A stretch of DNA of 64,000 nucleotides, from the IMG/VR virus record IMGVR_UViG_3300023174_000036, positions 1 through 64,000 of that record. One strand, written 5' to 3'. Positions within the stretch are counted from its first letter, which is position 1. The number at the start of each line of letters is the position of its first letter. Both the position numbers and the translations under genes were made by a program. Below are positions 3,971-21,677 of this stretch, one piece after another. The notes beneath the pieces are model-generated. The model saw nothing but the letters and a program-made list of their open reading frames with translations. It was not told the origin of the DNA and made no database searches.

Positions 3971-3979
3971 CCAAATGAC

Positions 3980-4008: not shown

Positions 4009-4039
4009 TAATGTATATTAACACGCGAAGGAGCGAACA

Positions 4040-4936: not shown

Positions 4937-4945
4937 GCTAGTGTG

Positions 4946-5114
4946 TACAGTACAGCAAGCAGCCTACAAGAGCTGTACGCTGTAGCAGTAGGACAAGCTA
5001 GTAGATTCGCTCCCGAACGCTTGCCCATAAACACTAACGCCAACAAGGCAATGGTGTTTGGATCTAGGAACTCGTAAGCCCGATTCGCTCCCGGCTAGTT
5101 CCTAGATTTTTTTT
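4946..5114 (+). ncRNA. Putative structured RNA (four hairpins; two loops with GAUUCGCUCCCG) ending in an intrinsic terminator
   Basis: Stems 4950-4978, 4991-5026, 5029-5059, 5062-5107 followed by T-tract; 12-mer repeated at 5004-5015 and 5082-5093. Confidence 0.65.
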
Positions 5115-5255
5115 GATCGGATTATCGAAAAAGAAAAGCCTCCCGGAGGTTGAGAATACGAAATATTCTGCGAGGGGGGGTCGGGGCATATACATTTACA
5201 ACTGTTGTATTTTTACAACAGCGCATGGAATTTTGGTGGGCATAGGTGCCAAATC

Positions 5256-5860: not shown

Positions 5861-5873
5861 TTGTTACTGTGCG

Positions 5874-5945
5874 TTAACGATTCATCACATACATGGTAAT
5901 TTCAAAGCCAAATCGCATTTCTTGTGCTGTTGGTTTAGTCCACAT
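5874..5945 (-). CDS. pqqA: PQQ precursor peptide PqqA (MWTKPTAQEMRFGFEITMYVMNR), not in ORF track
   Basis: 23 aa; MWTKP start, R-x-G-F-E-x-T-x-Y core with the ExxxY Glu/Tyr pair; AGGAGG RBS at 5953-5958. Confidence 0.95.
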   Translation of the reverse strand: MWTKPTAQEMRFGFEITMYVMNR

Positions 5946-6065
5946 GGTAGTTCCTCCTGGTTGATTACGGTTGTACATACTGTTCTTACACTAGTATGTA
6001 TCCGTATAGTAGCACGTATTCACCATGGAACACATAGTGAAAATCATTGATTCACCATAGTGATA

Positions 6066-6425
6066 TTATGGAGCAAAGTCACTGGCAGCTTGTGCTATAC
6101 GCCTGGCTTTAAGCTCATCTTCTTCACCAGTGTTGAGTTTCCCGCTCCATCCTGCCAAACTCAAAAACGGTACTCCCACTCTACTGGCAAAAGCACTGAG
6201 TCCATTCCAAAAGTTTGCGGCTCCATATGTGTTCACCGCATAGTTCAGCACACGCCATTGATCCACAGTCAAATAGGGTTTTAGCTGTGGGGCCGCAGTT
6301 ATAGCACCAGCGGCAACAGCACCAGTCCAATTGCCCTTGCTTATATAGTTCAGTATGGTTCGAATCAACACAGCATTTGCTGTGGCTTTTTCTGGCGCGG
6401 GCTCAGTGATTTCTTTCAGTCTCAT
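6066..6425 (-). CDS. Hypothetical late protein (MRLKEITEP...)
   Basis: Start moved to ATG 6425, 5 nt after TATAAATA (6431-6438). Confidence 0.65.
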   Translation of the reverse strand: MRLKEITEPAPEKATANAVLIRTILNYISKGNWTGAVAAGAITAAPQLKPYLTVDQWRVLNYAVNTYGAANFWNGLSAFASRVGVPFLSLAGWSGKLNTGEEDELKARRIAQAASDFAP

Positions 6426-6707
6426 ACATATATTTATAAGTATACATATGCTGATACCCATTCCGCTAGACCCCATAGCCGTAGACATCATAATAGAGCT
6501 ACTGTTGGAGTCTTTACAGTCATACGGGGCTGGGTGAGCATTAGCACTCATTTCGTGCGTTAACGCTCTGCTACTTCGTAGCTGTAAAAAATCTGCGCTT
6601 CGCGTTTGTTCTAAAATTTTGCGCTGGCGCTTCGCGATACTAAATAATCAGCGGTCCAATTAGTTTGAATCGCATAAATACACTTATAATTAAGGATATA
6701 CGATACA

Positions 6708-7025
6708 ATGAACCCGTTACCAACAACTTATACATTAGGACAGCGTACAATGAATTTTGTGGGTGCGTTGCAAAGTCTTTCTATTCACAGCAAGGAACAC
6801 CAGCACGTGGCACACCGAATTCTAGACAAGGTACATGCACCCAGATATCTTCACACGTTAACGCCAGAAGTGCTGGCCACCATGTACAGAACCATGCTGA
6901 CTGAAGCTGGACTTGATTCAGACTGTGTCACACAGTTCACTGACATTGCTGTGCAAATGAACCTGTTCCGTGATGTGGAAACACTGGATGACAATGTGAC
7001 TCCTTGGGTAGAACCACAGTCCTAA
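6708..7025 (+). CDS. Hypothetical protein
   Basis: CATAAATA 6673-6680 and AAGGA RBS. Confidence 0.65.
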   Translation: MNPLPTTYTLGQRTMNFVGALQSLSIHSKEHQHVAHRILDKVHAPRYLHTLTPEVLATMYRTMLTEAGLDSDCVTQFTDIAVQMNLFRDVETLDDNVTPWVEPQS

Positions 7026-7053
7026 AACCATGCCCGTTCCGCACGGGCATTTT
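7025..7053. terminator. Hairpin between convergent genes
   Basis: ATGCCCGT-TCCGC-ACGGGCAT followed by T residues. Confidence 0.6.
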
Positions 7054-7058
7054 CACCT

Positions 7059-7316
7059 CTAACTCCAGTGCAACAAGAACAGGGTTTTGTTGCGTTCTCG
7101 GCGGAAAGCTATACAGGCCTGCCAGTAATCCACACTGGTGCCGTTGTGATAAGCCCATTCCGAATAGTGATGTCCTATGTATTGATTCAGCCATGCTTCC
7201 ATCTCATCCACTGCTGTGACCCAATCCCATTGATCATTCACAATTATGGTGGGCCATGTGGCATAGGCAATGTGCTCAAACGGATGCAGTTCCGGAAGAT
7301 AAAAGCTTCTTGGCAT
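7059..7316 (-). CDS. Hypothetical Trp-rich protein (MPRSFYLPE...)
   Basis: Start moved to ATG 7316, 5 nt after CTAAATA. Confidence 0.65.
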   Translation of the reverse strand: MPRSFYLPELHPFEHIAYATWPTIIVNDQWDWVTAVDEMEAWLNQYIGHHYSEWAYHNGTSVDYWQACIAFRRERNKTLFLLHWS

Positions 7317-7381
7317 AAAAATATTTAGCCCATACACTAAAAAGTTAAATATCATATACACCAACAAGGATCACGTGCCGT

Positions 7382-7921
7382 ATGACTTTAATAGAATTTC
7401 CGCTTGAAAAATTCATCAACGCTTACCAGTTCAACGGGTCAGAAACCAATGCTGAACTGATAAGATTAATACGCGAGGACGGCGGCAAATTAAGTCAGCA
7501 AACTGTGGTCAAAGCCTACATGACTGATTGGCGCTTGACCATGGATCATCAAAGTCCGTTACTGGATCCTTTCTTCAAGTTTCTCAATGAAGGGTTGTCC
7601 CACAGTATAGCCAGCCTTGCAGGTGTTACCAAAGATCCTTTCAAATATCGCATTGCCAACATTTGGGGAGCAATATACAGCAAGGATGACCACACTGAAG
7701 CACACAGTCACGCACCTTGTCAAATGAGTTTTGTGTACTATGTTCAAGCAGATGACTCAGTATCTGCTCCATTGATATTTCCTGAAATTGAACACACAGT
7801 GATACCCAGCACTGGCATGCTGGTCATATGCCCAGGTTGGCTTACCCATTATGTGCCCAAGTACAATCCAGTCACTGGGCAAGAACGCATAGTTATTGCA
7901 GGCAATATAGAACTACAATGA
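7382..7921 (+). CDS. Putative 2OG-Fe(II) oxygenase
   Basis: HSH...SFVYY...PGWLTHYV...RIVIAGN. Confidence 0.8.
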   Translation: MTLIEFPLEKFINAYQFNGSETNAELIRLIREDGGKLSQQTVVKAYMTDWRLTMDHQSPLLDPFFKFLNEGLSHSIASLAGVTKDPFKYRIANIWGAIYSKDDHTEAHSHAPCQMSFVYYVQADDSVSAPLIFPEIEHTVIPSTGMLVICPGWLTHYVPKYNPVTGQERIVIAGNIELQ

Positions 7922-8475
7922 TAGACAGCACAGCACCAATCAGTTTTAACCTTGGACGATTTGTAAACACATACCAGTTCAGTGATTCTGAAACAATTCA
8001 AGCACTGATAGACACAATTAGGGCAGAAGCTGTGCGTGGCCAAAGACCCAGTAATGTACAGGCTTTGGTCACATGGAATCTTTACAACATTGATCACAAT
8101 GCCCAACCACAGGATAGATTTTTTACTTTTTTAAAAACCAGCCTTGAACACAGTTGGTCCAACTTGCTGTGTGATAACAAGGGCAGTGAATCAGTCAACT
8201 TTCGTATCAGCAGTATGTGGGGAGCAATTTATCAGCCAGGCGATTGGGCAGATTATCACACACACGGGCCCAGCAGAACCAGTTGGGTATATTATTTGCA
8301 AGCTGATCCTACTCAGGGTGCTCCTTTGGTTTTTGATAATACTGGTTATGAAATAATGCCCACCACTGGACAATTGATCATGTTCCCCAGCTGGTTGGGG
8401 CACAGTGTTCCCAAATTTATGCCCAAAGATGCCAGTGAACGCATTGTGCTGGCTGGCAATGTGGAAATACAATGA
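7918..8475 (+). CDS. Putative 2OG-Fe(II) oxygenase, tandem paralogue
   Basis: HTH...SWVYY...FPSWLGHSV...RIVLAGN; ATGA overlap. Confidence 0.8.
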   Translation: MIDSTAPISFNLGRFVNTYQFSDSETIQALIDTIRAEAVRGQRPSNVQALVTWNLYNIDHNAQPQDRFFTFLKTSLEHSWSNLLCDNKGSESVNFRISSMWGAIYQPGDWADYHTHGPSRTSWVYYLQADPTQGAPLVFDNTGYEIMPTTGQLIMFPSWLGHSVPKFMPKDASERIVLAGNVEIQ

Positions 8476-8506
8476 ACATCACGTTGCCTTTGTCAAGACA
8501 GTACAA

Positions 8507-8950
8507 TTAGTCCTTGTGGTAGTAACGGTAGTTCACTGAGGTTTCGTTGGTCTGGTGCACGAGTGCGCCATTCTTGATATGAAAGCGTCGGGCCATTTCA
8601 GTTTGTGGACTCAGTGTAACAATGTCGTTGACTTCACTGTGTTCTTTCAAAATCCAATCAGCAGCCTTTTTGATTAAAGCCGCACCTGCGCCAGGACTGT
8701 AACTCCAAATGGTATAAAACACAGCTACATTTTTGCTCTTGCTGACTGATTTTAAATCTTCTTCGTTCTTGGGGATTTCTGTGAGCCATTGCAAACAAGT
8801 AGCCGCCAGGATCTCTTCCCCTGCTTTGAGTAACAAGATTTCAGCCGCATCGTTGATACGTTGCTCAAGAGGAATATGCGGACGAACTGGATCGTCTTTG
8901 ATTACTCGGGTCAAAGGGTCAGTGATGTCTCTAATGTGGTGCAATTCCAT
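8507..8950 (-). CDS. Hypothetical protein, possible GNAT-like fold
   Basis: FYTIWSY.PGAG..LI and A.RFH.KNGA motifs; ATAAATA 8981-8987. Confidence 0.55.
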   Translation of the reverse strand: MELHHIRDITDPLTRVIKDDPVRPHIPLEQRINDAAEILLLKAGEEILAATCLQWLTEIPKNEEDLKSVSKSKNVAVFYTIWSYSPGAGAALIKKAADWILKEHSEVNDIVTLSPQTEMARRFHIKNGALVHQTNETSVNYRYYHKD

Positions 8951-9019
8951 GATAAGTCCTAGTGTGTATCTTTATATGCGTATTTATTAACAAGTGTGTG
9001 AAATGTTGTTACAACTAGA

Positions 9020-10507
9020 TTACACCAGGTCATCACCCGGCAAACTGTTCAACAATTCACGCAATTTGGTACTGGCCACTTCAGCTTTGATTTTAGGTTT
9101 GGCCAAGTCAAATCCTTCCTTGGGACTTGCCCGCTCCCAAGCAGTTGTGCTGCCAGCTTCTTCGCCTTGTGCAGTTTGTCTTTGCTTGATGCTGTTGAGT
9201 AGCGTTGAACCTGCACTGGCTTGCCCTGAGCCATATGAATCTTCTTGTTCGCAGTCAGTGATACGCAAACTGTCAATGTTGAACTCCAAATCAATCTTTT
9301 GTCCAACACCACTGCTACTACGTGTTTTCATCAGTTGTATTTGATAACGTCCACGTTCACGCATGGCCCTGCTGGTAAAGATACCAAACACGTTATCAGC
9401 TGTCTGGATCTTACTTAATCCGCCTGAAATATGACTGTGGTCAAATTCAATTTCTTCCACAGCTCCACGATTCAACTGCGCCGCAGTGATAAACACACAG
9501 TTCTTTTCCACTGCCAAATTGCGCAGTTCTTCCGACACATACTTGTCTTTGACAAACAAGTTTTCAGCACTGATGCGCTTGCTCAAGGGCATTAACAAGT
9601 CCATGTAGTCTACCAACAGTACATCGACCTTACGGCCCATTTTGATTTCATACTCTTTCAAATAAGCACGAATGTCATTGGCAGTCTTGCCACTGGGCAT
9701 GTATTTGACTTGAAACTGTCCCGACTTCTTGCCAATCATTTTGACTTTCATTTCAACATCGTCAATGTTCTTGAAAATCTCTCTAGTGGCCATACCAGTT
9801 ACCATGGCATCCACACGCATACTCACAAGTTCTTCACTCAACTCAAGTGTTAAGTAAATTACATTATATCCAGCAAGAGCATAGTTGACACCAAGATTAG
9901 CCAGGAATAGGGATTTACCAGCACCGCTACCGCCCGCCCAAATGTTGAGTTCGCCACGATTAAAGCCCCCAAACAACTTGTCATCAACTGCTTTCCAACC
10001 TGTAGATATTTGTCCATTTTTATCCTTAATCCTCATTAGTCTAGCACGGGGATCTTCAAAGTAGTCAGTACCCATGTCTCGTTGCAGGCCAATTTGCACA
10101 GCCGCTTTGATCTTTTCTTCCACTGGTCCATACTCACCTTTTTCCAGCAAGTCGGCTGATTCTAAAATTGCACGTTCAAGACCTTTGTGGCGGGTAAATG
10201 TTTCAAAGTCATTCATCAACCATTCAAAATGTTCTTCCCGTAATTCAGTGGCGGCTTTTAAGTTTGAACCTGTGGCCGCATTTAAAATGTCAGGTGTGGG
10301 CAACACATTGTTCTCACTCACATATTTGGTTAAGAATTCTGCTGGCTCTTGTAGTCTACGGTCAAACAGTTTGCTGTCAAAAATGCTTTGGCAACGCACA
10401 AATGTACCAGCATCTGCCAACATCATTTCCAAATAGACTTTTTGGATTTCATATCCATAGTCTACATTTTGTCTTGCTTTATCTTTGTCTTTGTTGTATT
10501 CACTCAT
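9020..10507 (-). CDS. DnaB-like replicative helicase (T4 gp41-like)
   Basis: GGSGAGKS, LTLELSEE, LLVDYMD, TAAQLNR, MKTR. Confidence 0.95.
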   Translation of the reverse strand: MSEYNKDKDKARQNVDYGYEIQKVYLEMMLADAGTFVRCQSIFDSKLFDRRLQEPAEFLTKYVSENNVLPTPDILNAATGSNLKAATELREEHFEWLMNDFETFTRHKGLERAILESADLLEKGEYGPVEEKIKAAVQIGLQRDMGTDYFEDPRARLMRIKDKNGQISTGWKAVDDKLFGGFNRGELNIWAGGSGAGKSLFLANLGVNYALAGYNVIYLTLELSEELVSMRVDAMVTGMATREIFKNIDDVEMKVKMIGKKSGQFQVKYMPSGKTANDIRAYLKEYEIKMGRKVDVLLVDYMDLLMPLSKRISAENLFVKDKYVSEELRNLAVEKNCVFITAAQLNRGAVEEIEFDHSHISGGLSKIQTADNVFGIFTSRAMRERGRYQIQLMKTRSSSGVGQKIDLEFNIDSLRITDCEQEDSYGSGQASAGSTLLNSIKQRQTAQGEEAGSTTAWERASPKEGFDLAKPKIKAEVASTKLRELLNSLPGDDLV

Positions 10508-10524: not shown

Positions 10525-11472
10525 TTAAATTTTAATTGCAATGTGTTTGACAGGAGCCCATCGATATTTCCACTCTCTTTGCTTGGTATGATACAGCACT
10601 GAACCAATTGCACTACTAGGATCTCCGGGATTAGGTAGGCTCCAACAGTACTTAAATCTTGGCTCTACAAACTTTTTATTAGCTGTACTATTCATAGCAC
10701 ATCCGCCCATGTAAACTAAACTATCTGTATCAATTAGTTGTTTAGCTTTGAGCATAACAGCTGATACTTGATCTTCAAACACCTGTTGTACTGCGGCCGC
10801 AATGTCGCATTGATCTTGCAAATTATTAATAGGATAGGGCCAATCTAAAACACCTCTATGTAAGTTACGGGTTAAATTAACTGTGTAATCTATATAACTT
10901 TTAACCTCGGGCAAATATCTTTTGGGGTCACCTTGTTCTGACATTTGTTGTAGCAAATATTCTTGCTTGATTGGTTCTAATCCTATCAGTTGTGTAAACG
11001 CACTATAGAATAATCCTAGACTATGTGGATAACTTCTGCTCCACACTTTTTTTATTTCACCGTGTAGCCCTTCCCAGATAGTTGCACACTCAAACTCTCC
11101 TATTGCATCGAGGACGACAATAGCACAATGATTAAAAGGACTAGTATAGTAACCGGCGGCAGCATGACTTGCATGATGCGGCGTATAAGTGATTGGTGCA
11201 TAGTGTAACCTTATATTATTTAAATATCTTTTAGGTAATACTGACAAATCCATTGCTGTTTTATATTGACCAGCATACACTTGTCTAGCTTTCTTAACCC
11301 AAGGTCTTTCATACCAAAATAATCTATCCGGAGCTCCTTGGTGCAATGCTTCGGTTATTATAGATGTATCAAACTCATCGTCTTTACAAGTAGTCCACGA
11401 AATAAGTGCGCCGTCCTTAAATACGGCTAGACTTGACCCGTGATTAAGAGCGTTTATCCCCCACTGTATCAT
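10525..11472 (-). CDS. Carbamoyltransferase N-terminal (Kae1-like) domain only
   Basis: HHASHAA, DAIGE, SLGLFYS, GGCAMN, PGDPSSAIG; no C-terminal domain. Confidence 0.8.
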   Translation of the reverse strand: MIQWGINALNHGSSLAVFKDGALISWTTCKDDEFDTSIITEALHQGAPDRLFWYERPWVKKARQVYAGQYKTAMDLSVLPKRYLNNIRLHYAPITYTPHHASHAAAGYYTSPFNHCAIVVLDAIGEFECATIWEGLHGEIKKVWSRSYPHSLGLFYSAFTQLIGLEPIKQEYLLQQMSEQGDPKRYLPEVKSYIDYTVNLTRNLHRGVLDWPYPINNLQDQCDIAAAVQQVFEDQVSAVMLKAKQLIDTDSLVYMGGCAMNSTANKKFVEPRFKYCWSLPNPGDPSSAIGSVLYHTKQREWKYRWAPVKHIAIKI

Positions 11473-11582
11473 TTGTAGATAAATGGATCGCGTTTACGTA
11501 ATTCTTCAAGACGTTTTTTGAAACGCTTGCGTTCTTGGTATTTGTACCAAGGTGTAAGTAACCAATTAATTATTTTATTCAT
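11469..11582 (-). CDS. 37-aa basic peptide (MNKIINWLL...RKRDPFIYK), not in ORF track
   Basis: ATGA overlaps at both ends; AAGGAG RBS. Confidence 0.7.
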   Translation of the reverse strand: MNKIINWLLTPWYKYQERKRFKKRLEELRKRDPFIYK

Positions 11583-12547
11583 TCTATCTCCTTAAACCAT
11601 TTCTTTGCTCTCAATTGTATTTTGAGACTGTTTGATTCTTTTGCCGATACAATCAAGTATAATGTAGCCAATCTTCCTAATTTTATCACAGCATCATTTA
11701 CATCTTTAACGCCTTCGGGCCAATCAGGCATACTAACTGACCAGCCGTATTCTAATGCTTGCTCCACAGTCTTAGGACCTTCGTGATCTCTGTCTGGTAC
11801 TAGTATAATTTCCTTGCTTAGTTGTTTAAGCAACCAATTCTGACTGTCCTTTATTTCTGCTCCAAGTAAAGCACATCCATCAATACTTATCGCATCAAAC
11901 GGTCCTTCACAAACAATTACGAAGTTTCGATTGTTTATTTGTCTATCTAAATTAAACACATATCCCGGTTGTTGCTCGCTAATATACTTGGGTTTAACGT
12001 CGCCTATGGCCCGGGCAGTGTATCCTACAATGACATTGTCTTTGAGGAACGGTATAATCAACCGGTTGCTAAAACCTATCTTAGGAGTCCAATAGAAAGG
12101 ATAATCTTCGAGATATAAATTTCTATTTGAAAGATACTCGAGTACAGGAACTAACTTGTCCGGGATATGGTTTAAACTGGAAATGAGTTCACTATCAGGC
12201 GGTAATTCACGTGGTTCAAACTTAGGTATAACACTACGTATTACTGTATTTGTATTGTCATTTAATCTAAGAGCTTCTAGACGTAATTGATTTATAATGT
12301 CGTCACTCATGTTGAGTAATCGCATTAACTTATTCATCTTTTGACTAATTGCTCTGCCAGGTTGCCAACTGGCTTTGAACTGGCAATTAAAACAATGATA
12401 GCTGACAGCATCACCGGCATTGACGATAAAACCGCCACGTTGGCGTTTATCATCACAGCAAGGGGCATTAAAACTTATCCAACCGCTTGGAGTTTGTTTT
12501 CGCTTACCTGGTAAGTGTTGTAATAGTGTGTCGGCTATGAGGCTCAT
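11579..12547 (-). CDS. DNA primase (T4 gp61-like)
   Basis: Zn finger PCC...HCFNC; TOPRIM VCEGPFDA, PDRD, KDVND. Confidence 0.92.
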   Translation of the reverse strand: MSLIADTLLQHLPGKRKQTPSGWISFNAPCCDDKRQRGGFIVNAGDAVSYHCFNCQFKASWQPGRAISQKMNKLMRLLNMSDDIINQLRLEALRLNDNTNTVIRSVIPKFEPRELPPDSELISSLNHIPDKLVPVLEYLSNRNLYLEDYPFYWTPKIGFSNRLIIPFLKDNVIVGYTARAIGDVKPKYISEQQPGYVFNLDRQINNRNFVIVCEGPFDAISIDGCALLGAEIKDSQNWLLKQLSKEIILVPDRDHEGPKTVEQALEYGWSVSMPDWPEGVKDVNDAVIKLGRLATLYLIVSAKESNSLKIQLRAKKWFKEIE

Positions 12548-13391: not shown

Positions 13392-13766
13392 ATGGCAAAA
13401 CTACGAGACAATATAGAACAACAACTACCCTTTATCAGCGTGTTAAACTACGGTGAAAACGAATACGTGGGTATCATTATAAATCAAGATCAGTTTGTTA
13501 CTAGTTTCTATGATCTAAATGCTATTCGTACACCAGAAGAAAAATCTCAATTTTTAATTATTGGCGAAGCATGGTGGTGGGAATCAAATCGACAATTTCC
13601 AATTAATATATTCTGTAGAGAACAGATATATCCATTTCAGTATGCTATCAAGACTTTTAACAGCAAAGATACACGAATATTACTTGGTCCGTGTGTTAAT
13701 TTAATGAATTTAACTGTTAAACGTGTTAAACGTAAGAGTGTACAGTTAGTCCGTAAGGTTCGTTAA
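13392..13766 (+). CDS. Hypothetical protein
   Basis: 124-aa ORF filling divergent gap. Confidence 0.7.
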   Translation: MAKLRDNIEQQLPFISVLNYGENEYVGIIINQDQFVTSFYDLNAIRTPEEKSQFLIIGEAWWWESNRQFPINIFCREQIYPFQYAIKTFNSKDTRILLGPCVNLMNLTVKRVKRKSVQLVRKVR

Positions 13767-14324
13767 TTTTTCACAAATTAAATTCATCTGCACCACAACG
13801 GCCGCCGCATATGCCACCGCGTGGGCTTTCTTAAAATAATATTCATCTCCGACAGGCTTTACCCACACCTCGTCTAAAACTTTGTTCCAGTCTTGACCTA
13901 TCAAATAGCGTTTTGCAGGGCGAATCATTGCTAGTACAGCCGCAAGTTGCTCGATGGTCTTTGGTTGCATTTCTCGAAGTATTGATCCGTGTCCGTTCAC
14001 GTGAAACAGCAGATTTGAAAAGTCGTCCTGTTGCAATAAATCCCATAACGGTTCAGTCTCCAGTAATTTTTTTAAGTGCTCTTTATTTTTAACGCCTTCA
14101 TAGACGCCTACATTCAGGAAATCTATTTTAAAATATCCTCTGTCTTCTGCAGATTTATAATCAATGGTGCTTAGTCCAGTTAACGGGTTGTACGGAATAG
14201 ACGTACAATATATGCCAGTGTTATGCTTTTTAAAAATGCCATGGTCTTCTATAGCCGCAGTAACGTGTTTGAAATGTTCAAGGGCTCGTGTTCTATCTGC
14301 AAAGTCAATATCAATATCTGGCAT
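13746..14324 (-). CDS. Minimal DnaE (Pol III alpha)-like protein
   Basis: PDIDIDF, HNTGIY, GYFKIDFL, LAMIRP, FKKAHAVAY motifs. Confidence 0.85.
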   Translation of the reverse strand: MPDIDIDFADRTRALEHFKHVTAAIEDHGIFKKHNTGIYCTSIPYNPLTGLSTIDYKSAEDRGYFKIDFLNVGVYEGVKNKEHLKKLLETEPLWDLLQQDDFSNLLFHVNGHGSILREMQPKTIEQLAAVLAMIRPAKRYLIGQDWNKVLDEVWVKPVGDEYYFKKAHAVAYAAAVVVQMNLICEKLTNLTD

Positions 14325-15019
14325 TATATATTTGATTCCTTGGCTACTTGGCGAACTAATTCAGTATCTGCTGGCAGTTTTTTAAATCTGTTTAACCAAA
14401 AAGGTATATCCATAATTGCAGTGACGGCAGTCAACTGATCGTCTGTAAATTTCTTTATCATTGCTTTACCGCTTGAACTGTTTAATACCAACCACGGACT
14501 TACTTTGCCATCTTTAATATCATAAGTGGCACGACTAAGACTCACGTAATGAAAATAATGATTCCATTGACTATTGTTGTCATCAGCCCACGACATCATG
14601 TGATTGATAGTTCGCTGTAGAGCAGTTTCTACAGTTTCCGTCCGGACCAAATTGATAACATACTTGTCGTACAACTCATCCCTGCACCAATGGTCGAGTT
14701 TGACTCCGCTGGTAACAACGTAGTCAATAAATCGGTCCGGGTACAAAGGATTAACATTACTAACAAAGCTGCCAAACTTGACAAAAGCATTGTAATAAGG
14801 GCTCCTAGCAAAATCCTCATAAGTTTTATCTTGTTTACTATTTTGCGTTTTTCTGTAAAATCTGTTATAAGTGTCATATCCCAACATCACATGTTTTTCA
14901 GTCTTAGCAAGAGATCGTCTCTTTTGCTCGCACAAATGTACAGCCAATGTTTTTTCCTTTGTAAATCCTGATTTACAAAATTGGCAAGTGTACGTTTTGT
15001 TTTCGGAACTAATTATCAT
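14324..15019 (-). CDS. Hypothetical protein with N-terminal zinc finger
   Basis: YTCQFCKSGFTKEKTLAVHLC. Confidence 0.75.
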   Translation of the reverse strand: MIISSENKTYTCQFCKSGFTKEKTLAVHLCEQKRRSLAKTEKHVMLGYDTYNRFYRKTQNSKQDKTYEDFARSPYYNAFVKFGSFVSNVNPLYPDRFIDYVVTSGVKLDHWCRDELYDKYVINLVRTETVETALQRTINHMMSWADDNNSQWNHYFHYVSLSRATYDIKDGKVSPWLVLNSSSGKAMIKKFTDDQLTAVTAIMDIPFWLNRFKKLPADTELVRQVAKESNI

Positions 15020-15492
15020 TTAATCTTTTTGGCAATAGTTGCTTCGTCATACCCGTGTCGTCTTGCTAGATCTTTAAGCTCTTTGTCTGTAGACAGTTTT
15101 GCCATAATTTCAATTTCGTCTAGTTTTTTATTAGGGTATAGTTCTTCTAAAAATTTAGATTTCTTACTACTGCCTTCTTTCTTTTTATTTCCTAACCACT
15201 GGTGAAAGAACACAGTACTCTTGTCATAACTGCACATACACAGCAACAACCATAATAACTTAGGATGTTTTTGAAGCACATTCCAATTTTTATTAAAGTA
15301 CTCGTTAACAGTTAATACAAAATGTTCTTGTACGTCTCGTTTGGAACTTTGTACATTGCTGATATAACGATTGAGAATAAAATATTCGTTCTTAAGAGCT
15401 TTGCGTTGCTCTGCATCCATCTCGTCCCATAAGGTTCGAAAGTTCATATCTACAGCCGCAAGTTTTTCTTTAAGTTCAATTTTTTCACTCAT
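15016..15492 (-). CDS. Possible clamp-loader small subunit (gp62-like)
   Basis: FILNRYIS...NE...W..KKK...LEELYP pattern, size and replication-gene context. Confidence 0.45.
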   Translation of the reverse strand: MSEKIELKEKLAAVDMNFRTLWDEMDAEQRKALKNEYFILNRYISNVQSSKRDVQEHFVLTVNEYFNKNWNVLQKHPKLLWLLLCMCSYDKSTVFFHQWLGNKKKEGSSKKSKFLEELYPNKKLDEIEIMAKLSTDKELKDLARRHGYDEATIAKKIK

Positions 15493-15773
15493 AGCGGTTT
15501 ATCCTTACTAAGCCTATATATCATTATAGCACGGTCTAATGCTTTTTGTAAAGCGGGATTGGTCTTTGCTTCTCGCCGAATCTCTCCCCACAGCTTATCT
15601 TCCATTATATGTTCGCGCAATGGTCGACCATCATTTGTGCGAGGATCAGGTTTATCTTCCATTTCGTACTTATAACCAATTAGTTTGCGTTCCGTGGCAC
15701 CAAACTCTCGGGCATATACTTCATCACCGTTGCGTTCGTAAATGTAAGTAGCACCAGGTTTAAGACTGCCCAT
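15489..15773 (-). CDS. Hypothetical protein (MGSLKPGATYIYER...)
   Basis: Overlapping operon arrangement. Confidence 0.7.
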   Translation of the reverse strand: MGSLKPGATYIYERNGDEVYAREFGATERKLIGYKYEMEDKPDPRTNDGRPLREHIMEDKLWGEIRREAKTNPALQKALDRAIMIYRLSKDKPL

Positions 15774-16404
15774 CTTGCATATCCTCACGAGGCACTAATA
15801 TTGAATCAAATGCCATAACAGTTCTATGCCCATCACCTTTCCACGGATACACAGTATGCGGAAGATGACTTGGGAATAAGATAAAAGTTCCAGGCTCCGG
15901 CGTGTATTTCCAAGTATCGTTCATTATAAACTTGGTCAAATCTTTGTTTGTAGGCAACCTAAATAAAATTTGACCATCTGAGGGTAGTCTGGCTTCATCG
16001 TAATCCGGCGCACTGATATAAATGTTACCACTTAAATTGCCGGCAGGATGTGTGTGCATTTCTTGATAGTCGCCGGCAGTTTGCCTAATGGTCCAAATGC
16101 TGGTAACTTTGGGTTGACAATATTTTAAATCTTCTACGCCAGATTGTGTGGTAATTAAATCCATATAACCCTGGCATGCTTCTTCTAACCAAGATACAAG
16201 CCACTGTACATCTACATTCAAATTGTTGGGATAAACTTGTATTTGTTGTCCGCCTCGAATACTTAAACCTGCGTTATTTGCATCATTGAGTTCAGGATGC
16301 GAATGTAACATTTCAGAAAGATTAAATATTTTACTAAACTCAACGGGACTTACAGGGCCTGCTACCACAACCGTCGGCACAAAATAAGCTATTTTTAATG
16401 TCAT
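15760..16404 (-). CDS. Putative 2OG-Fe(II) oxygenase
   Basis: HTH..LSGNIY...FPSHLPHTVYP...RTVMAFD. Confidence 0.8.
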   Translation of the reverse strand: MTLKIAYFVPTVVVAGPVSPVEFSKIFNLSEMLHSHPELNDANNAGLSIRGGQQIQVYPNNLNVDVQWLVSWLEEACQGYMDLITTQSGVEDLKYCQPKVTSIWTIRQTAGDYQEMHTHPAGNLSGNIYISAPDYDEARLPSDGQILFRLPTNKDLTKFIMNDTWKYTPEPGTFILFPSHLPHTVYPWKGDGHRTVMAFDSILVPREDMQDGQS

Positions 16405-16913: not shown

Positions 16914-18380
16914 TTATTTTTGCCAATCTGTCTTTTCAATAGTGAAAGGATATTTGGCATCCTTGTAAAATTTCTTTCGTTCTGTAAGATGCCGTTTAGC
17001 ATACTTACAAGTGGACGTAATGTCCCATATTTGGACAAAATCTTTGTCTTCTGCTTTTCTTATGCCGCGGCCAATGCTTTGAATAACTCTAGTAAACGAT
17101 TTGCCAGACTCCAGCAATACCAAGTTAAAGATCCTAGGAATATTAATACCAACAGCCGCGACACCATAGGTTGCAACAATAATTTTGTTAGTACTTGTTT
17201 TAATTTCATCATACTCCTCTTTCCTATCTTTAGTTTTGACCTCTCCAGACACAAAAACAGCATCCTCTAATTCATTAATAATAAATTTGCCTGAATCAAT
17301 TCTATTAACTAGAACCAATGTGTTGCCTGTTTGTGATATTTTTTTAATTAATTTGCTGACATAGATCATTCTATCTTCGTCAGTCACTAGATACTTTAAT
17401 TCCTCGCTATATGCGGTAAATTCAGGTAGGTCTATCAGTTGTACTATATTAACATGGCAAGTGCTTAATACGCCAATATCTTGCAGTTCATGTGCTTTGA
17501 TTCCGCCAACTACCGGGCCAAGGCTTGCAAAAATTTGTTCGTATTCGAATTTTTCTTTAGGAACAGTACCGGTTAAACCCCAACGTATAGGTGCATTGCA
17601 TAAATTTTGTGTAAGCAAATTCTTTAACACTTCGGCTTTGGCCATATGCACTTCGTCAACAATCACACATTTGACTCCGTCAAGGAATTCAGCCAGTGTT
17701 ACAATATCGTGCTCGTGATTTTTACTTTTCTTATCTAGAATATTAAGACTTTGCCATGTACAAATGGTATGTGTTTTGTTTAAATCTTTACGGTCGCCAT
17801 AGTAAACACCTACATCTAGACCCACTGCAATAAAATCTTCCTCAGTTTGCTCCACTAAACTCTTGTTAGGCACAATAGTAATTGTGCGGCCATATTTCTC
17901 AGCCAACTGACTTAGGGTTGCAGTGGTAATTGTTTTGCCAGCACCTGTGGCAATTTCTTGCAAGCTCTGTGTATTGGTTAAAAATGTATTAATTGCCGCC
18001 ACTTGATAGTCACGCAACATAATAGGTTGGCCAGCCTGCTGGTGACCTTTTGGCCATACTTTACCTTGATCGGCCCAGTATGTTTCAGTCACTGGAGTAA
18101 ACGAAATTGCGCTGGTAGTGCGTAAATCTTCTACGTCATCAACACTAATTCCCAGCTTGCTCAGTATGCCAAATATAGCTTCTAGTTGGCTGAGATAACC
18201 ATTGCCGCCGAGACCAAATAAACTAACCATGCCGTCCCACCGTCCAAGTTTAAATGCTGGATGATATCTTGCATAGGGAATTTCGTATTTAAAAGAGTTG
18301 GCTAGCTTCTTGCGAGCATCAAGTGGCAAGCCTTCTAACTTGATGTTGACTTCGTCTTTGATTATCAATTTAACTGCCAT
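16914..18380 (-). CDS. uvsW: UvsW-like SF2 DNA helicase
   Basis: LRDYQ, ATGAGKT, DEVH, LTGT, QSIGRGIR; start at ATG 18380. Confidence 0.9.
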   Translation of the reverse strand: MAVKLIIKDEVNIKLEGLPLDARKKLANSFKYEIPYARYHPAFKLGRWDGMVSLFGLGGNGYLSQLEAIFGILSKLGISVDDVEDLRTTSAISFTPVTETYWADQGKVWPKGHQQAGQPIMLRDYQVAAINTFLTNTQSLQEIATGAGKTITTATLSQLAEKYGRTITIVPNKSLVEQTEEDFIAVGLDVGVYYGDRKDLNKTHTICTWQSLNILDKKSKNHEHDIVTLAEFLDGVKCVIVDEVHMAKAEVLKNLLTQNLCNAPIRWGLTGTVPKEKFEYEQIFASLGPVVGGIKAHELQDIGVLSTCHVNIVQLIDLPEFTAYSEELKYLVTDEDRMIYVSKLIKKISQTGNTLVLVNRIDSGKFIINELEDAVFVSGEVKTKDRKEEYDEIKTSTNKIIVATYGVAAVGINIPRIFNLVLLESGKSFTRVIQSIGRGIRKAEDKDFVQIWDITSTCKYAKRHLTERKKFYKDAKYPFTIEKTDWQK

Positions 18381-19560
18381 GATTTGCCTTCGAATCCAAT
18401 ACTGGTTTAGTGTCAGTATACGACACAACCAAGTCACAACAGTTGGCATATACCATAGATTTATTATTTCGTATAGTGTCTAACACAATCACACTCATAG
18501 GAGTCCATTTATTTTTTAATAAGAATTTAGGTATCTTATTAGCTTGAATCCCTACAACAACAGTATCGTCATCTAATTGAGCGTTGTATTTGTTACTGGA
18601 TATAAGTTGATTAAATTCTTTGCCAATGCCTTGGCTATCTAATCTAAAATATATACCAACACTGTTATTGACTTTGTTTTCTTTCAATGCTGTATCTAGC
18701 ACTTTCATATTTTTATATACTATGTCGGAATCCCAATTAGGAAATACTATTAGTATAGGAGCTCTACGTAGCTCTATCAAAGAAGATATCACTTGTTTTA
18801 AACTATAGAGTTTGCTGTCTACCCATACTTTAGATGTGTTCCTGTATGCAAGTTCTCCTGCTAATGTTCCAGGTTTTTCTTCTTTATTATCAAATGTGTA
18901 CTGATATCTAAAACTTCTATCTTTGATTATCAAATGATCAATTATTGTTTCGATGCCAAGTTCACTGGTAATACTTTTGTGAAAATTTTGATTTGAAATA
19001 TTAGAAATGTCAAACCTATCCTCGACTTCTTTTCTTTCCCAGCTTTTAATTATATTTGCGTAACTAATAATTTCTTCATCTATTTCAAATTGCAACGGAG
19101 ATAATAGATCAACTAACAACATAATATTTTGTTCAGTTAATGTTGCTGTGTATCCTTTGGCAGGATGTACTTGTACAAACCCTTCTATCTTATTGGCATT
19201 GGTTTGTAATAATTTTCTTATGTTAGCCGAATATGAAAAATTAATACTCAATAACACATCACCATCAACAGTCTTAGATAGTTGTAATTTTTTATATTCT
19301 TCGACTTGTCTAAAAGAACGTGTCCATACAGGATCAACTAGTAAATCGGACATATCGTGCCAAACTGTTTGTAACGATAGTATATGTTCCTTAAATAATT
19401 TTAATATCAATTTAGATTGATTTTCGGTAATAAAATAATGAGAATTTACAGATGTTGCAAGACTACGCAATACTCTGCTATCTCTAGCAGACATTAAGTC
19501 TTCTACAGTGGGATTAGTATTATTTACAATGTCTAGTAATAGCTCGTCTATAGTTATCAT
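18370..19560 (-). CDS. Hypothetical protein
   Basis: Long ORF; start at ATG 19560 after TTGACA-16-TATAAT. Confidence 0.75.
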   Translation of the reverse strand: MITIDELLLDIVNNTNPTVEDLMSARDSRVLRSLATSVNSHYFITENQSKLILKLFKEHILSLQTVWHDMSDLLVDPVWTRSFRQVEEYKKLQLSKTVDGDVLLSINFSYSANIRKLLQTNANKIEGFVQVHPAKGYTATLTEQNIMLLVDLLSPLQFEIDEEIISYANIIKSWERKEVEDRFDISNISNQNFHKSITSELGIETIIDHLIIKDRSFRYQYTFDNKEEKPGTLAGELAYRNTSKVWVDSKLYSLKQVISSLIELRRAPILIVFPNWDSDIVYKNMKVLDTALKENKVNNSVGIYFRLDSQGIGKEFNQLISSNKYNAQLDDDTVVVGIQANKIPKFLLKNKWTPMSVIVLDTIRNNKSMVYANCCDLVVSYTDTKPVLDSKANHGS

Positions 19561-19607
19561 ATGAATTATTATAACACACTTTTGTTGTTTGTCAAAGAAA
19601 ATAGACA

Positions 19608-19640
19608 AAAAAATAGGCCTCAATATTATTTAAGGCCTAT
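19608..19640 (-). terminator. Intrinsic terminator
   Basis: ATAGGCCT/AGGCCTAT stem followed by T-tract on minus strand. Confidence 0.7.
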
Positions 19641-19663: not shown

Positions 19664-20119
19664 TTATAAACTTGCGTCTTCCATACCGGCAATTCTTAGT
19701 TTTACAATATTAGTGATTTGCCATTGCTTCTGATCAAGACCTTTGGTAATGCCAAGCCACTTGTTGCGCAACAGTGCAAATTCATTTATAATCTTTTCAA
19801 AGTCCACAACGTCAGCTTCGCCTTCTACAAATCTTTCACAATCTCTAGAACTTAATGCCCGCTGATAATTTTCAAGATATTTTCTAAAATGACTGCTTTT
19901 TAAACGGCGTAATTCAATGTTTAGATACTCTAAGATAGCTTCGATTTCTTGCAATTGTCCAAATCTATGTTCAACAACTCCAGGAAGAGCAGCCGAAGAT
20001 TTTTCCAAATTACCAACAAGTTTGATCTCAGATTTAGCTGACATCAACTCATCTTCAAAGTGCTGAACAGCATCAGGGATATGACTAATATCCTTGGCTA
20101 TCTTAGTGTACCATCCCAT
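19664..20119 (-). CDS. uvsY: UvsY-like recombination mediator
   Basis: Helical 151 aa ending KQWQITNIVKLRIAG; near uvsX/uvsW. Confidence 0.7.
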   Translation of the reverse strand: MGWYTKIAKDISHIPDAVQHFEDELMSAKSEIKLVGNLEKSSAALPGVVEHRFGQLQEIEAILEYLNIELRRLKSSHFRKYLENYQRALSSRDCERFVEGEADVVDFEKIINEFALLRNKWLGITKGLDQKQWQITNIVKLRIAGMEDASL

Positions 20120-20352
20120 TAAAACTCCATTTCTTTATAATCGCGGTCGTCTTCGTCTTCGTCGTCAAGATAATAACTAATAGCTTGGTCAAGTGTATCG
20201 TCAATACCGATAGCACCTTTCATTACTTTATCACTGACGCCAAAGTCTGCAAGCAAATCAATGTATCTTTCTGCCACATTCTCTAGTTGTTTTTTATCTA
20301 GATACTCTACAAAATTTAACCAAATATCACCAATTTGTGTTTCATTCAACAT
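20119..20352 (-). CDS. Small acidic hypothetical protein
   Basis: Overlaps both neighbours. Confidence 0.7.
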   Translation of the reverse strand: MLNETQIGDIWLNFVEYLDKKQLENVAERYIDLLADFGVSDKVMKGAIGIDDTLDQAISYYLDDEDEDDRDYKEMEF

Positions 20353-21397
20353 GCTCTTCTGTCTCCTCAGGAATGGTAGTTGTTGTTTTAATCAAATGAA
20401 ATTTATTCATTATCATATCTAATTTATCATCTTTCCATTCTTTTCGGTAGAATTTGTGTTCTTCTCCAGTCTCGGGATCAATCCATGCAAGTCTATTACC
20501 AGACTGTTTCAATAGACCTTGTTTTTCAAACATATCTACTAGACCACTGTATGGGTTCATACCTGTACTGTATGGGATTTTAATTTGCAATGTTTCAAAA
20601 GGTTTGCTATAGCGTGTTTTCATAATCTTGCATGAAGCACGAATACCATTCACTTCTGCAACCTTGTTGCCGTCTTCGTCTTCTTTCAACTTCAATTTCT
20701 TCATAGCAACTACGATAGAACTTGCGTAAACGAATCCTTGTCCACCTGAGATTTTGTCATCTGGATCAAACATATCTTGGCTAGCGTATGTGTGGTTGGT
20801 ACATACCATTCCAACGTTGTGATTACCAAACATGTTAACACAGTTACGAACTAATGAGGTTAATGCTTTTGGCTTACGGCCCATATCACCTTTCATGTCA
20901 CCAGCTTGAAACTGGTTAATGTCAGTGGGAGTAAGCAACATACCTAGTGAGTCTATGACAAACATGACCTTAGGACGATTTTCCATTACTTTATAATCTG
21001 TCATGAATTCGTGTATCGTTTTAGCAACGTCATCAATCATGGCCATATTAAGTTTAAGTAACTTGTCTTCACTGGTGTCAACGCCAAGGTCTTTCAACCA
21101 TTGTTCGTCAAGTGCATTTTCTGTATCAATTAAGATACAGTAGATACCTTGATCTTGTGCATTCTTAATGATGTTTCCGGAACAAATATAACTTTTGCCC
21201 GCTCCGGATTCGCCAGCAAATACCGTAACTTTGCCCAACGGAACACCTTTGTTCCAGTCACCGCTAATTAGATAGTTTAGTGCAAAATTACCTGTGCTAA
21301 CCCAATCAGTTGGGTCATTAAACCCAATGCCCAAACCGTCAATTGACTTGGTCAAGGTCTTTCTAAATTTACTTAAATCAAACGCTTTAGTTGCCAT
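20342..21397 (-). CDS. uvsX: RecA-like recombinase UvsX
   Basis: GESGAGKS, IDTENA, VIDSLG, SGGQG, KTR. Confidence 0.93.
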   Translation of the reverse strand: MATKAFDLSKFRKTLTKSIDGLGIGFNDPTDWVSTGNFALNYLISGDWNKGVPLGKVTVFAGESGAGKSYICSGNIIKNAQDQGIYCILIDTENALDEQWLKDLGVDTSEDKLLKLNMAMIDDVAKTIHEFMTDYKVMENRPKVMFVIDSLGMLLTPTDINQFQAGDMKGDMGRKPKALTSLVRNCVNMFGNHNVGMVCTNHTYASQDMFDPDDKISGGQGFVYASSIVVAMKKLKLKEDEDGNKVAEVNGIRASCKIMKTRYSKPFETLQIKIPYSTGMNPYSGLVDMFEKQGLLKQSGNRLAWIDPETGEEHKFYRKEWKDDKLDMIMNKFHLIKTTTTIPEETEEHVE

Positions 21398-21398
21398 A

Positions 21399-21611
21399 TT
21401 AAACGTCCCTATCCATTTCGCATGCTTCACGTACCAGTGAAACTACTTCATCTAGGTTGTTACACAAGATTTTAGCGTTAACATAATCGCCTTTCTTGTT
21501 GCGTCCACCTGCTTCCACCATGAAGCCATTGTCGTACATGTTAACTGTAAACGACTCATTTACTTTGGTCAATTTGTCGCCAAATGACTTTATTGTTTTT
21601 GCTGTTGCCAT
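21399..21611 (-). CDS. Hypothetical protein
   Basis: AGGAG RBS. Confidence 0.75.
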   Translation of the reverse strand: MATAKTIKSFGDKLTKVNESFTVNMYDNGFMVEAGGRNKKGDYVNAKILCNNLDEVVSLVREACEMDRDV

Positions 21612-21677
21612 TTTATTTCTCCTAATAAAGATAACCCGGGCGTATGACTAAGTCACAGAGGCCCAAGTCGTTTGCTT

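What the first reader, a model, noticed from the sequence alone, without database searches (positions are those of the whole stretch)
13746..14324. 192-aa miniature DnaE that keeps all three catalytic aspartates
Seen: the protein begins at PDIDIDF and retains, in order, counterparts of the DnaE motifs HAxG (HNTG), KxDFL (FKIDFL), LxRPG (MIRP) and FNKSH.AAY (FKKAHAVAY). Established: in the ~1100-aa Pol III alpha these motifs span several hundred residues and supply the three catalytic Asp (PDxDxD and KxD). Here the PHP, thumb, most of the fingers, the clamp-binding and OB regions are missing through internal deletion, not truncation. The gene is coupled to a zinc-finger protein gene. Inference: a streamlined C-family nucleotidyltransferase with a new role (primer extension, repair, nucleotide signalling or modification), or one subunit of a split polymerase.
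Basis: partly seen in the sequence, partly recalled or inferred. Interest (0 to 1): 0.66.

Follow-up and report, generated by a model that had tools for sequence, protein, structure and literature searches.

The report
Half of a split mini-DnaE polymerase
This 192-residue gene of an uncultivated jumbo phage is the metal- and template-binding half of a two-piece miniature bacterial-type (Pol III alpha) DNA polymerase, whose other half lies 171 kb away; the system was already described by computation in 2021 but has never been tested at the bench.

Summary
Window 13746-14324 (-) is an intact 192-aa ORF that starts MPDIDIDF and carries, in order, the DnaE motifs. These map to E. coli D401/D403, H511, K553/D555, R639-P640 and F756-H760.

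It is not a decaying fragment. In 126 relatives, lengths are 185-202 aa, the key residues are invariant, and dN/dS is about 0.14. The fold model (pLDDT 90) matches only C-family polymerases, with Z up to 9.8 against 3.3 for the next, unrelated chain.

The gene lacks the nucleotide-binding GRGS half of the palm. That half is a separate 170-aa gene at G000:C1:184641-185153, outside the window. It stops where DnaE residue 392 aligns, and this gene starts at DnaE residue 399. Both halves occur in all 11 genomes checked and are never adjacent. They co-fold with a score of 0.92 (best control 0.00).

The genome is a 356-kb phage that also has a full family B polymerase. Iyer et al. 2021 already described this "minimal split Pol III alpha" in group 2.2 jumbo phages, so this is a new member of a known, biochemically untested kind.

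The zinc-finger neighbour is conserved in synteny, but its role is unknown.

The parts
13746..14324 (-). C-terminal unit of the split minimal Pol III alpha (192 aa). It carries the catalytic Asp strands (D3, D5, D68) and a reduced finger (R135-P136, K166, H168).
   Evidence: ORF. phrog_11778 E 8e-64. AF2 pLDDT 90.1. VIA Z 9.8 to Taq DnaE residues 461-838 and Z 8.7 to E. coli residues 400-784. Key residues invariant in 126 sequences. dN/dS median 0.14.
14324..15019 (-). Upstream 231-aa protein with an N-terminal Cys/His zinc knuckle and an all-helical body. Its stop codon overlaps the start of the C-unit (TAATG). It is a conserved syntenic neighbour of unknown function.
   Evidence: phrog_11058 E 6e-58 with no Pfam hit. 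A homologue lies upstream on the same strand in 126 of 133 loci. AF2 pLDDT 89.4. No PDB fold match: Foldseek best E 1.4, VIA wide best Z 4.2. Only a weak BFVD hint to gp59-type helicase loaders, E 0.3.
13392..13766 (+). Convergent 124-aa ORF whose 3' end overlaps the 3' end of the C-unit by 21 nt. It is a conserved neighbour of unknown function.
   Evidence: phrog_11637 E 4e-30. A homologue lies downstream on the opposite strand in 128 of 133 loci, with a median gap of 0.
15016..15492 (-). 158-aa protein of unknown function that belongs to the same conserved gene block.
   Evidence: phrog_11758 E 7e-11. A homologue lies upstream in 110 of 133 loci.
11579..12547 (-). DnaG/gp61-type primase, two genes downstream of the C-unit (context).
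   Evidence: Toprim_2 E 9e-7 and phrog_47 E 5e-48. Downstream in 115 of 133 loci.
9020..10507 (-). DnaB/gp41-type replicative helicase (context).
   Evidence: phrog_19 E 8e-69. Same position in 121Q, Phosso, PA5oct and others.
16914..18449 (-). UvsW-type helicase at the upstream edge of the block. UvsY, UvsX and the SSB lie beyond it (context).
   Evidence: phrog_16 E 2e-73. UvsY, UvsX and SSB at 19664-22742.

Best explanation
The gene encodes the C-terminal, metal- and template-binding subunit of the two-gene 'minimal split DNA polymerase III alpha' of group 2.2 (RaK2 / PA5oct / Atu_ph07-like) jumbo phages.

Shown here:
- It is homologous to the part of DnaE from the PDxDxD strand to the FNKSH helix (E. 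coli 399 to about 784). The thumb (about 79 residues) and about 88 residues of the fingers are excised.
- It keeps D401, D403, D555, K553, R639-P640, K758 and the steric-gate H760 equivalents without exception.
- The other half of the Pol-beta-like palm is a separate 170-aa protein (RvxxEL helix plus the GVGRGSS strand-turn-helix, E. coli 321-392) at G000:C1:184641-185153. It stops one residue after the EFL that aligns to DnaE 390-392.
- The two halves are predicted to pack strand against strand (C residues 2-9 against N residues 131-144).

Inferred:
- The heterodimer is an active, dNTP-selective, template-directed DNA polymerase.
- It has no PHP, thumb, proofreading, clamp-binding or OB modules, so it should be distributive.
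- It serves as an accessory polymerase beside the phage's 894-aa family B replicase. Its invariable position next to the primase and DnaB-type helicase suggests short primer extension or gap filling at the fork, or repair.
For: Family and fold.

Selection: 125 IMG/VR loci have lengths of 185-202 aa. D3, D5, D7, H34, K66, D68, R135, P136, K138, H168 and Y172 are invariant in 126 sequences. NG86 dN/dS has a median of 0.14 over 570 pairs.

N-unit: found with Atu_ph07 gp316 as probe. PF07733 scores 40.2 bits, above its cut-off. In 80 loci it is 155-185 aa long, and 78 of them end one residue after [ED]F[LMF].

Co-occurrence: the N-unit was searched for and found in all 10 other genomes tested, plus the window's own, 11-224 kb from the C-unit. 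Host-genus counts in cultured phages match for nearly every genus. The two units are never within 2-3 kb of each other in 212 loci.

Co-fold: ipSAE 0.92 / 0.91 / 0.92, best of 3 controls 0.00. That mark was reached by 58 of 80 solved complexes and 2 of 110 mismatched pairs. The runs agree in at least 98% of contacts, and the partner's pLDDT is at least 90.

Steric gate: H760 and the catalytic D401/D403/D555 are taken from PMC8485763.

Context: PolB sits in an 894-aa frame, and the block holds primase, helicases, UvsX/Y and SSB.

Prior description: PMC7824862.
Against: No biochemistry exists for any member.

Sequence similarity of the C-unit to cellular Pol III alpha is weak. PF17657 scores 15.3 bits against a cut-off of 22, and the PDB profile E is 0.0012.

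The co-fold is of two halves of one known domain, so a high score may partly reflect the model's memory of the DnaE fold. My own alignments were used, so the calibration counts hold only roughly.

With no thumb, HhH or clamp-binding module, it is uncertain how the enzyme would grip primer-template DNA. The specific role (primer extension or repair) rests only on gene neighbourhood.
Confidence: 0.8

Rival explanations
1. The N+C heterodimer is a nucleotidyltransferase with non-replicative chemistry: template-independent tailing, synthesis of a signalling or decoy nucleotide, or addition of a modified nucleotide. It would not be a template-directed DNA polymerase.
For: The Pol-beta-like superfamily holds many such enzymes (established knowledge). 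The thumb and most DNA-gripping modules are missing. The phage already has a complete PolB.
Against: Features specific to templated dNTP insertion are invariant: the steric-gate His, the finger helix FKKxHxxxY, and R135-P136. The gene sits in the replication block, not among defence or counter-defence genes.
Confidence: 0.12
2. The 192-aa protein is a self-sufficient miniature enzyme that acts alone.
For: It holds all three catalytic Asp, and its own fold model is confident.
Against: It lacks the G-S triphosphate-binding strand-helix of every Pol-beta-like nucleotidyltransferase. That piece is encoded separately, co-occurs in all 11 genomes searched, and is predicted to complete the sheet.
Confidence: 0.04
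3. It is a non-catalytic remnant kept for a structural or regulatory role, for example binding the primase-helicase or the replicase.
For: No activity has been shown, and there are conserved neighbours of unknown function.
Against: Catalytic and dNTP-contacting residues are invariant across sequences as little as 31% identical. A scaffold would not need this.
Confidence: 0.03
4. It is a decaying fragment of a captured bacterial dnaE, or two exteins joined by a split intein as in cyanobacterial DnaE.
For: It is short and only weakly similar to DnaE. Split dnaE genes with inteins exist in cyanobacteria (established knowledge).
Against: Lengths are tight and dN/dS is 0.14. More than 8000 clusters at 90% identity exist in metagenomes, nearly all of those listed being 192 aa. 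The N-unit stops one residue after EFL and the C-unit starts MPD, which leaves no room for intein halves and provides no Cys/Ser/Thr at +1.
Confidence: 0.01

Closest known systems
Minimal split DNA polymerase III alpha of group 2.2 jumbo phages (Iyer, Anantharaman, Krishnan, Burroughs, Aravind 2021, Viruses 13:63; PHROG phrog_11778 for the C-unit)
   Same: Full-length match to phrog_11778 (E 8e-64). It is 37-51% identical to the proteins of Atu_ph07, Phosso, PA5oct, 121Q, RaK2 and XacN1. It has the same two-gene split with distant loci, the same company of a family B polymerase and T4-like replication genes, and the same neighbourhood.
   Different: Nothing essential differs. This copy comes from an uncultivated 356-kb IMG/VR phage of a very abundant environmental clade. 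Its zinc-finger gene abuts the C-unit directly, and no DnaQ-like exonuclease was found in this genome, unlike 121Q, XacN1 and Atu_ph07.
Bacterial DnaE / PolC (C-family replicases, about 1100-1450 aa)
   Same: The Pol-beta-like palm has the same three Asp, the same GRGS motif (in the N-unit), the RP motif and the FNKSH finger helix with the steric-gate His. Nearly the whole model superposes structurally, 181-191 of 192 residues.
   Different: About 362 aa in two chains instead of more than 1100 in one. There is no PHP, thumb, HhH, clamp-binding motif, OB or tau-binding domain. Scores fall far below NCBIfam equivalog cut-offs.
B. subtilis DnaE as a primer extender handing off to PolC, and eukaryotic Pol alpha-primase (functional analogy only)
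   Same: A second, less processive polymerase sits beside the main replicase, and the gene sits next to the primase and replicative helicase. The DnaE role is as described in the abstracts of PMC5627055 and PMC5737612.
   Different: No evidence of primase contact or hand-off here. The analogy is inference from gene order.
Cyanobacterial split-intein DnaE
   Same: The catalytic subunit is encoded by two distant genes.
   Different: The split site is different, and there are no intein halves, so association must be non-covalent.

Membership tests
Split minimal Pol III alpha of group 2.2 jumbo phages (Iyer 2021; phrog_11778) | Full-length similarity of the roughly 190-aa protein to the family profile and to named members | tested here: met
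   phrog_11778 E 8e-64, covering residues 3-187 of 192. Found in 96 phage records, 93 of them covering at least 80% of the query.
Split minimal Pol III alpha of group 2.2 jumbo phages (Iyer 2021; phrog_11778) | A separate N-terminal NTP-binding unit encoded by a distant gene in the same genome | tested here: met
   G000:C1:184641-185153 (-), 170 aa, PF07733 at 40.2 bits, 171 kb away. The same holds in 10 of 10 other genomes.
Split minimal Pol III alpha of group 2.2 jumbo phages (Iyer 2021; phrog_11778) | Accompanied by a family B polymerase and T4-type replication genes in a jumbo genome | tested here: met
   PF00136 match in an 894-aa frame. UvsW, UvsX, UvsY, SSB, primase and DnaB helicase are present. 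The record is 356,312 bp.
Split minimal Pol III alpha of group 2.2 jumbo phages (Iyer 2021; phrog_11778) | The two units associate to rebuild one catalytic domain | tested here: inconclusive
   The co-fold scores 0.92 against a best control of 0.00 (58 of 80 solved complexes and 2 of 110 mismatched pairs reached the mark). The runs agree in at least 98% of contacts and the partner's pLDDT is at least 90. This is a model's confidence, not a measurement.
C-family DNA polymerase catalytic core (DnaE/PolC) | Three catalytic Asp on two palm strands (E. coli D401, D403, D555) | tested here: met
   D3, D5 and D68 are invariant in 126 of 126 sequences and lie on predicted strands 4-7 and 66-70. Their spatial clustering could not be measured because no coordinates were available.
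C-family DNA polymerase catalytic core (DnaE/PolC) | G-S triphosphate-binding motif (E. coli G363-S364) in the same chain | tested here: not met
   Absent from the 192-aa ORF. It is present as G140-S141 of the separate N-unit.
C-family DNA polymerase catalytic core (DnaE/PolC) | Finger helix FNKSH with the steric-gate His (H760), and the RP motif | tested here: met
   F164-K-K-A-H168 and R135-P136. H168, R135 and P136 are invariant. The role of H760 comes from PMC8485763.
C-family DNA polymerase catalytic core (DnaE/PolC) | PHP domain, thumb, HhH, clamp-binding motif and OB fold | tested here: not met
   No PF02811 or PF14579 match anywhere in the genome. Only 27 residues lie between D7 and H34, against 106 in E. 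coli. The protein ends 20 residues after the finger helix.
C-family DNA polymerase catalytic core (DnaE/PolC) | Curated family thresholds (Pfam, NCBIfam) | tested here: not met
   C-unit: PF17657 at 15.3 bits against a cut-off of 22, and TIGR00594 at 21 bits against 434. The N-unit does pass PF07733.
C-family DNA polymerase catalytic core (DnaE/PolC) | Template-directed DNA synthesis | not testable with these tools
   No biochemical report was found for any member.
Split-intein DnaE | Intein N and C halves at the split, with a nucleophile at +1 | tested here: not met
   The N-unit stops one residue after EFL in 78 of 80 loci, and the C-unit starts M-P-D.

The most novel reading that the evidence does not exclude
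The two-chain mini Pol III alpha is the catalytic heart of a larger phage-specific machine. That machine would also use the syntenic zinc-finger helical protein (14324-15019) and perhaps the convergent 124-aa protein (13392-13766) in place of the missing thumb and clamp modules. It would work with the adjacent primase-helicase as a Pol-alpha-like primer extender that hands off to the family B replicase. This would give a T4-like replisome a second, bacterial-type polymerase.
Probability: 0.15. Interest if true: 0.7.

Novelty: new member of a known kind. Interest (0 to 1): 0.35.

Why it matters
If active, this roughly 360-residue two-chain enzyme would be the smallest known C-family DNA polymerase. 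That would define the minimal catalytic core of the bacterial replicase fold. It also bears on whether that fold began as a small modular enzyme (the view of Iyer et al.) or was cut down by phages.

It would also mean that a very abundant group of environmental jumbo phages runs a replisome that combines an archaeo-eukaryotic-type PolB with a bacterial-type polymerase. For this scan the practical value is lower: the family is already in the literature and in PHROGs.

This work adds the following:
- the location of the partner gene in this genome
- the exact, conserved split point
- purifying selection on the gene
- retention of the steric-gate His
- a controlled co-fold of the two halves
- two conserved neighbour genes of unknown function

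Tried and rejected
- **Megablast of the 7-kb region against phages:** no match, so no close cultured relative.
- **Paper supplements:** the supplements of Iyer et al. are not held, so accession numbers for the two units could not be read. I located the N-unit through the Atu_ph07 paper's gp316 instead.
- **DnaQ-like exonuclease:** PF00929 and the 121Q 'polymerase exonuclease subunit' both found nothing in this genome. A blank in a 96%-complete record is weak evidence of absence.
- **Other DnaE pieces:** searches for PHP, HHH_6 and finger domains, and tblastn with E. coli DnaE, found nothing beyond the two units.
- **Zinc-finger neighbour:** Pfam, NCBIfam, the ESM Atlas, Foldseek PDB and VIA wide gave no assignment. 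BFVD gave only a weak lead to gp59-type helicase loaders at E 0.3. I do not adopt it.
co-folds with 14324-15019 and 15016-15492 were not run. The single complex job went to the likeliest pair, C-unit plus N-unit.
- The family was not left open by the cheaper searches.
- **Asp geometry:** model coordinates are not exposed, so it was not measured.
- **Rejected readings:** a decaying fragment, a split intein, and a stand-alone enzyme (see rivals).

Full report
**Observation**

Window 13746-14324 (minus strand) is an intact 192-aa ORF that starts MPDIDIDF.
- HNTG at 34-37
- FKIDFL at 65-70
- MIRP at 133-136
- FKKAHAVAY at 164-172

The stop codon of the upstream zinc-finger gene overlaps the start codon by one base (TAATG).

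**Is the protein really DnaE-like?**

Pfam gives only a sub-threshold hit, PF17657 at 15.3 bits against a cut-off of 22. Other evidence is stronger:
- PHROGs gives a full-length match to phrog_11778, 'DNA polymerase', at E 8e-64. It also gives a partial match to the roughly 1190-position Pol III profile phrog_405 at E 4e-7.
- A profile of the family searched against all PDB sequences returns Pol III alpha chains for nine of its ten hits. The segments are collinear: M. tuberculosis DnaE1 412-425, 568-666 and 773-788.
- NCBIfam hits only Pol III alpha models, far below their cut-offs.
- An AlphaFold2 model built on 57 sequences has mean pLDDT 90.1.
- Foldseek's top 16 PDB matches are all C-family polymerases.
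- VIA-align's top 14 are all DnaE or PolC. They align 178-191 of the 192 residues at Z 6.1-9.8. The best is Taq DnaE 3e0d_A: Z 9.8, 187 residues aligned, rmsd 4.3 A, chain residues 461-838. E. coli 2hnh scores Z 8.7 over residues 400-784, and PolC 3f2b scores Z 9.3. The next, unrelated chain scores Z 3.3.

**Mapping onto E. coli DnaE**

| Phage residue | E. coli DnaE residue |
|---|---|
| D3 | D401 |
| D5 | D403 |
| D7 | D405 |
| H34 | H511 |
| K66 / D68 | K553 / D555 |
| R135-P136 | R639-P640 |
| F164-H168 | F756-H760 |

D401, D403 and D555 are the catalytic residues. H760 is the proposed steric gate against ribonucleotides and is invariant in Pol III alpha (PMC8485763).

Relative to E. coli, three things are missing from this ORF:
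- About 79 residues between D405 and H511 (the thumb).
- About 88 residues between P640 and F756.
- Everything after about residue 784; the protein ends 20 residues after the finger helix.

**It is not a decaying fragment**

- The word search found more than 8000 clusters at 90% identity (the candidate cap). Nearly all of those listed are exactly 192 aa, and JGI often names them 'DNA polymerase III alpha subunit'.
- In 125 IMG/VR loci the ORF is 185-202 aa long.
- D3, D5, D7, H34, K66, D68, R135, P136, K138, H168 and Y172 are invariant in 126 sequences.
- The same residues remain invariant in cultured phages down to 31% identity.
- Pairwise Nei-Gojobori dN/dS has a median of 0.14 over 570 pairs, with a maximum of 0.30.

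The spatial clustering of the Asp could not be measured because model coordinates are not exposed.

**What the genome is**

The window is the first 64 kb of a 356,312-bp IMG/VR virus record estimated to be 96% complete.

The gene lies in a T4-like replication block:
- DnaB-type helicase at 9020-10507
- primase at 11579-12547
- UvsW at 16914-18449
- UvsY, UvsX and SSB at 19664-22742
- large terminase at 26806-28404

A family B polymerase lies in an 894-aa frame near 157-160 kb.

tblastn finds the protein in 96 cultured phages at 30-51% identity. Nearly all are jumbo phages: Atu_ph07, Phosso, PA5oct, 121Q, PBECO4, RaK2, K64-1, CBB, XacN1 and SCTP-2. The local gene order is the same in them.

**The other half**

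Iyer et al. 2021 (PMC7824862) described this system in exactly these 'group 2.2' phages. [quoted passage not shown]

I used Atu_ph07 gp316 as a probe; the Atu_ph07 paper (PMC6102473) calls it Pol III alpha. This located the N-unit of this genome at G000:C1:184641-185153 (-). It is 170 aa long and lies 171 kb from the C-unit, outside the window.

Properties of the N-unit:
- It passes Pfam PF07733 at 40.2 bits against a cut-off of 23.9.
- Its residues 95-166 align to E. coli DnaE 321-392, including G138-R-G-S141 = G361-S364.
- In 80 IMG/VR loci it is 155-185 aa long. In 78 of them the stop codon comes one residue after [ED]F[LMF], which corresponds to DnaE 390-392.

The C-unit begins at the residue aligned to DnaE M399. 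The split therefore falls in one short loop, and its position is conserved. There is no room for intein halves.

**Co-occurrence of the two halves**

- The N-unit was found as a separate ORF of about 170-180 aa in all 10 other genomes tested, all chosen because they carry the C-unit. It lies 11-224 kb away from the C-unit.
- Host-genus counts in cultured phages match between the two units for nearly every genus. The N-unit probe additionally hits phages that carry full-length DnaE or PolC.
- In 132 C-unit loci (±3 kb) and 80 N-unit loci (±2 kb), the other unit is never nearby.
- Each unit is single-copy here, and no other DnaE piece was found: no PHP, no HhH, no further finger.

**Co-fold of the two halves**

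- The C-unit plus N-unit co-fold scored 0.92, 0.91 and 0.92.
- The best of 3 controls scored 0.00.
- The pass mark was reached by 58 of 80 solved complexes and by 2 of 110 mismatched pairs.
- The runs agree in at least 98% of contacts, and the partner's pLDDT is at least 90.
- The DxD strand (C residues 2-9) pairs with the strand before the GRGS turn (N residues 131-144).
- The phage-specific N-terminal third of the N-unit (residues 1-32 and 62-75, with invariant D66, Q70 and W73) packs on C residues 40-48 and 62-65.

There are two caveats. These are two halves of a domain whose fold is known, so the score may partly come from the model's memory. My own alignments were used, so the calibration counts hold only roughly.

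**Mechanism**

Shown: homology, the split, co-occurrence, selection, and retention of every catalytic and dNTP-contacting residue examined.

Inferred: the heterodimer is an active, templated, dNTP-selective polymerase. The steric-gate His argues for dNTPs. It has no thumb, proofreading domain or clamp-binding module, so it should be distributive. It would act beside PolB.

Its fixed position two genes from the primase and DnaB-type helicase suggests primer extension or gap filling at the fork. This would be analogous to B. subtilis DnaE acting before PolC (abstracts of PMC5627055 and PMC5737612). Iyer et al. proposed synthesis of one strand, or repair. No experiment on any member was found.

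**Neighbours**

- *Zinc-finger protein (14324-15019).* A homologue lies upstream on the same strand in 126 of 133 loci. It is directly adjacent in PA5oct and XacN1 and one to three small genes away in others. Its model (pLDDT 89.4) is an N-terminal zinc knuckle plus an all-helical body. It has no convincing PDB match and only a weak hint to gp59-type helicase loaders.
- *Convergent 124-aa ORF (13392-13766).* It is conserved in 128 of 133 loci.

The roles of both are unknown.

**Verdict**

The 'split polymerase subunit' reading is supported, and the 'stand-alone enzyme' reading is not.

The kind is already known from comparative genomics and is present in PHROGs, and JGI names many of its metagenomic homologues as Pol III alpha. 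This copy is therefore a new member of it. The feature remains biologically remarkable and is still untested at the bench.

Noticed in passing
L088:4001-4567 (Atu_ph07, MF403008.1 58304-58870): The deposited CDS AUZ94883.1 starts at locus position 4073. That is 24 codons downstream of the conserved PDIDIDF motif, which is in frame at 4001. The annotated protein therefore lacks two of the three catalytic Asp, so the start is probably mis-called. The product is labelled hypothetical.
   Followed up: partly
L093 and L153 (Alishewanella phage Slickus01, OQ508957.1, 141,644 bp): Both units of the split mini Pol III alpha occur in a 141-kb phage, about 11 kb apart and next to an RFC small subunit. 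The system is therefore not confined to genomes above 200 kb.
   Followed up: partly
window 15760-16404 (-) and L005:197-757 (-) = G000:C1:183343-183903: Each polymerase half has a PF13759 2OG-Fe(II) oxygenase paralogue within a few genes (E 1.6e-19 and 1.5e-14). A Cpn10/GroES-like gene (L005:758-1168) sits between the oxygenase and the N-unit. I did not check whether this pairing is conserved.
   Followed up: no
window 10525-11472 (-): A NodU/CmcH-like carbamoyltransferase N-terminal region (phrog_1601, E 8e-24, 315 aa against a profile of 528) is inserted between the DnaB-type helicase and the primase. In 121Q and PA5oct those two genes are adjacent.
   Followed up: no
window 13749-13769 (last 7 codons of the C-unit) and the same position in 126 relatives: After the invariant N-L-I-C-E, most relatives end in a 7-residue aromatic tail of the form x-[ILV]-S-Y-[EG]-[FY]-[SA]. 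This copy has KLTNLTD, and PA5oct ends PDPFKLFS. It could be a docking peptide, for instance for a clamp or a partner. This is untested.
   Followed up: partly
G000 whole record, compared with L002:802-1620 (121Q gene 9) and L092:6865-7458 (XacN1 ORF223): 121Q, XacN1 and Atu_ph07 annotate a DnaQ/epsilon-like exonuclease. Neither PF00929 nor the 121Q protein finds a counterpart in this 96%-complete genome. The positional equivalent between UvsY and UvsW (window 18370-19623) has no family hit.
   Followed up: partly
L004:16878-19847 (Atu_ph07): In Atu_ph07 the family B polymerase is annotated as two adjacent genes (1254 and 1698 bp). This genome has one 894-aa frame.
   Followed up: no
window 1-10000 and 54001-58000: G+C is 0.44-0.48 in these stretches, against 0.34-0.40 across the replication block at 10-22 kb. 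The cause was not examined.
   Followed up: no
window 58213-63933 (-): A very long ORF of 1906 aa with a GTG start, not characterised.
   Followed up: no
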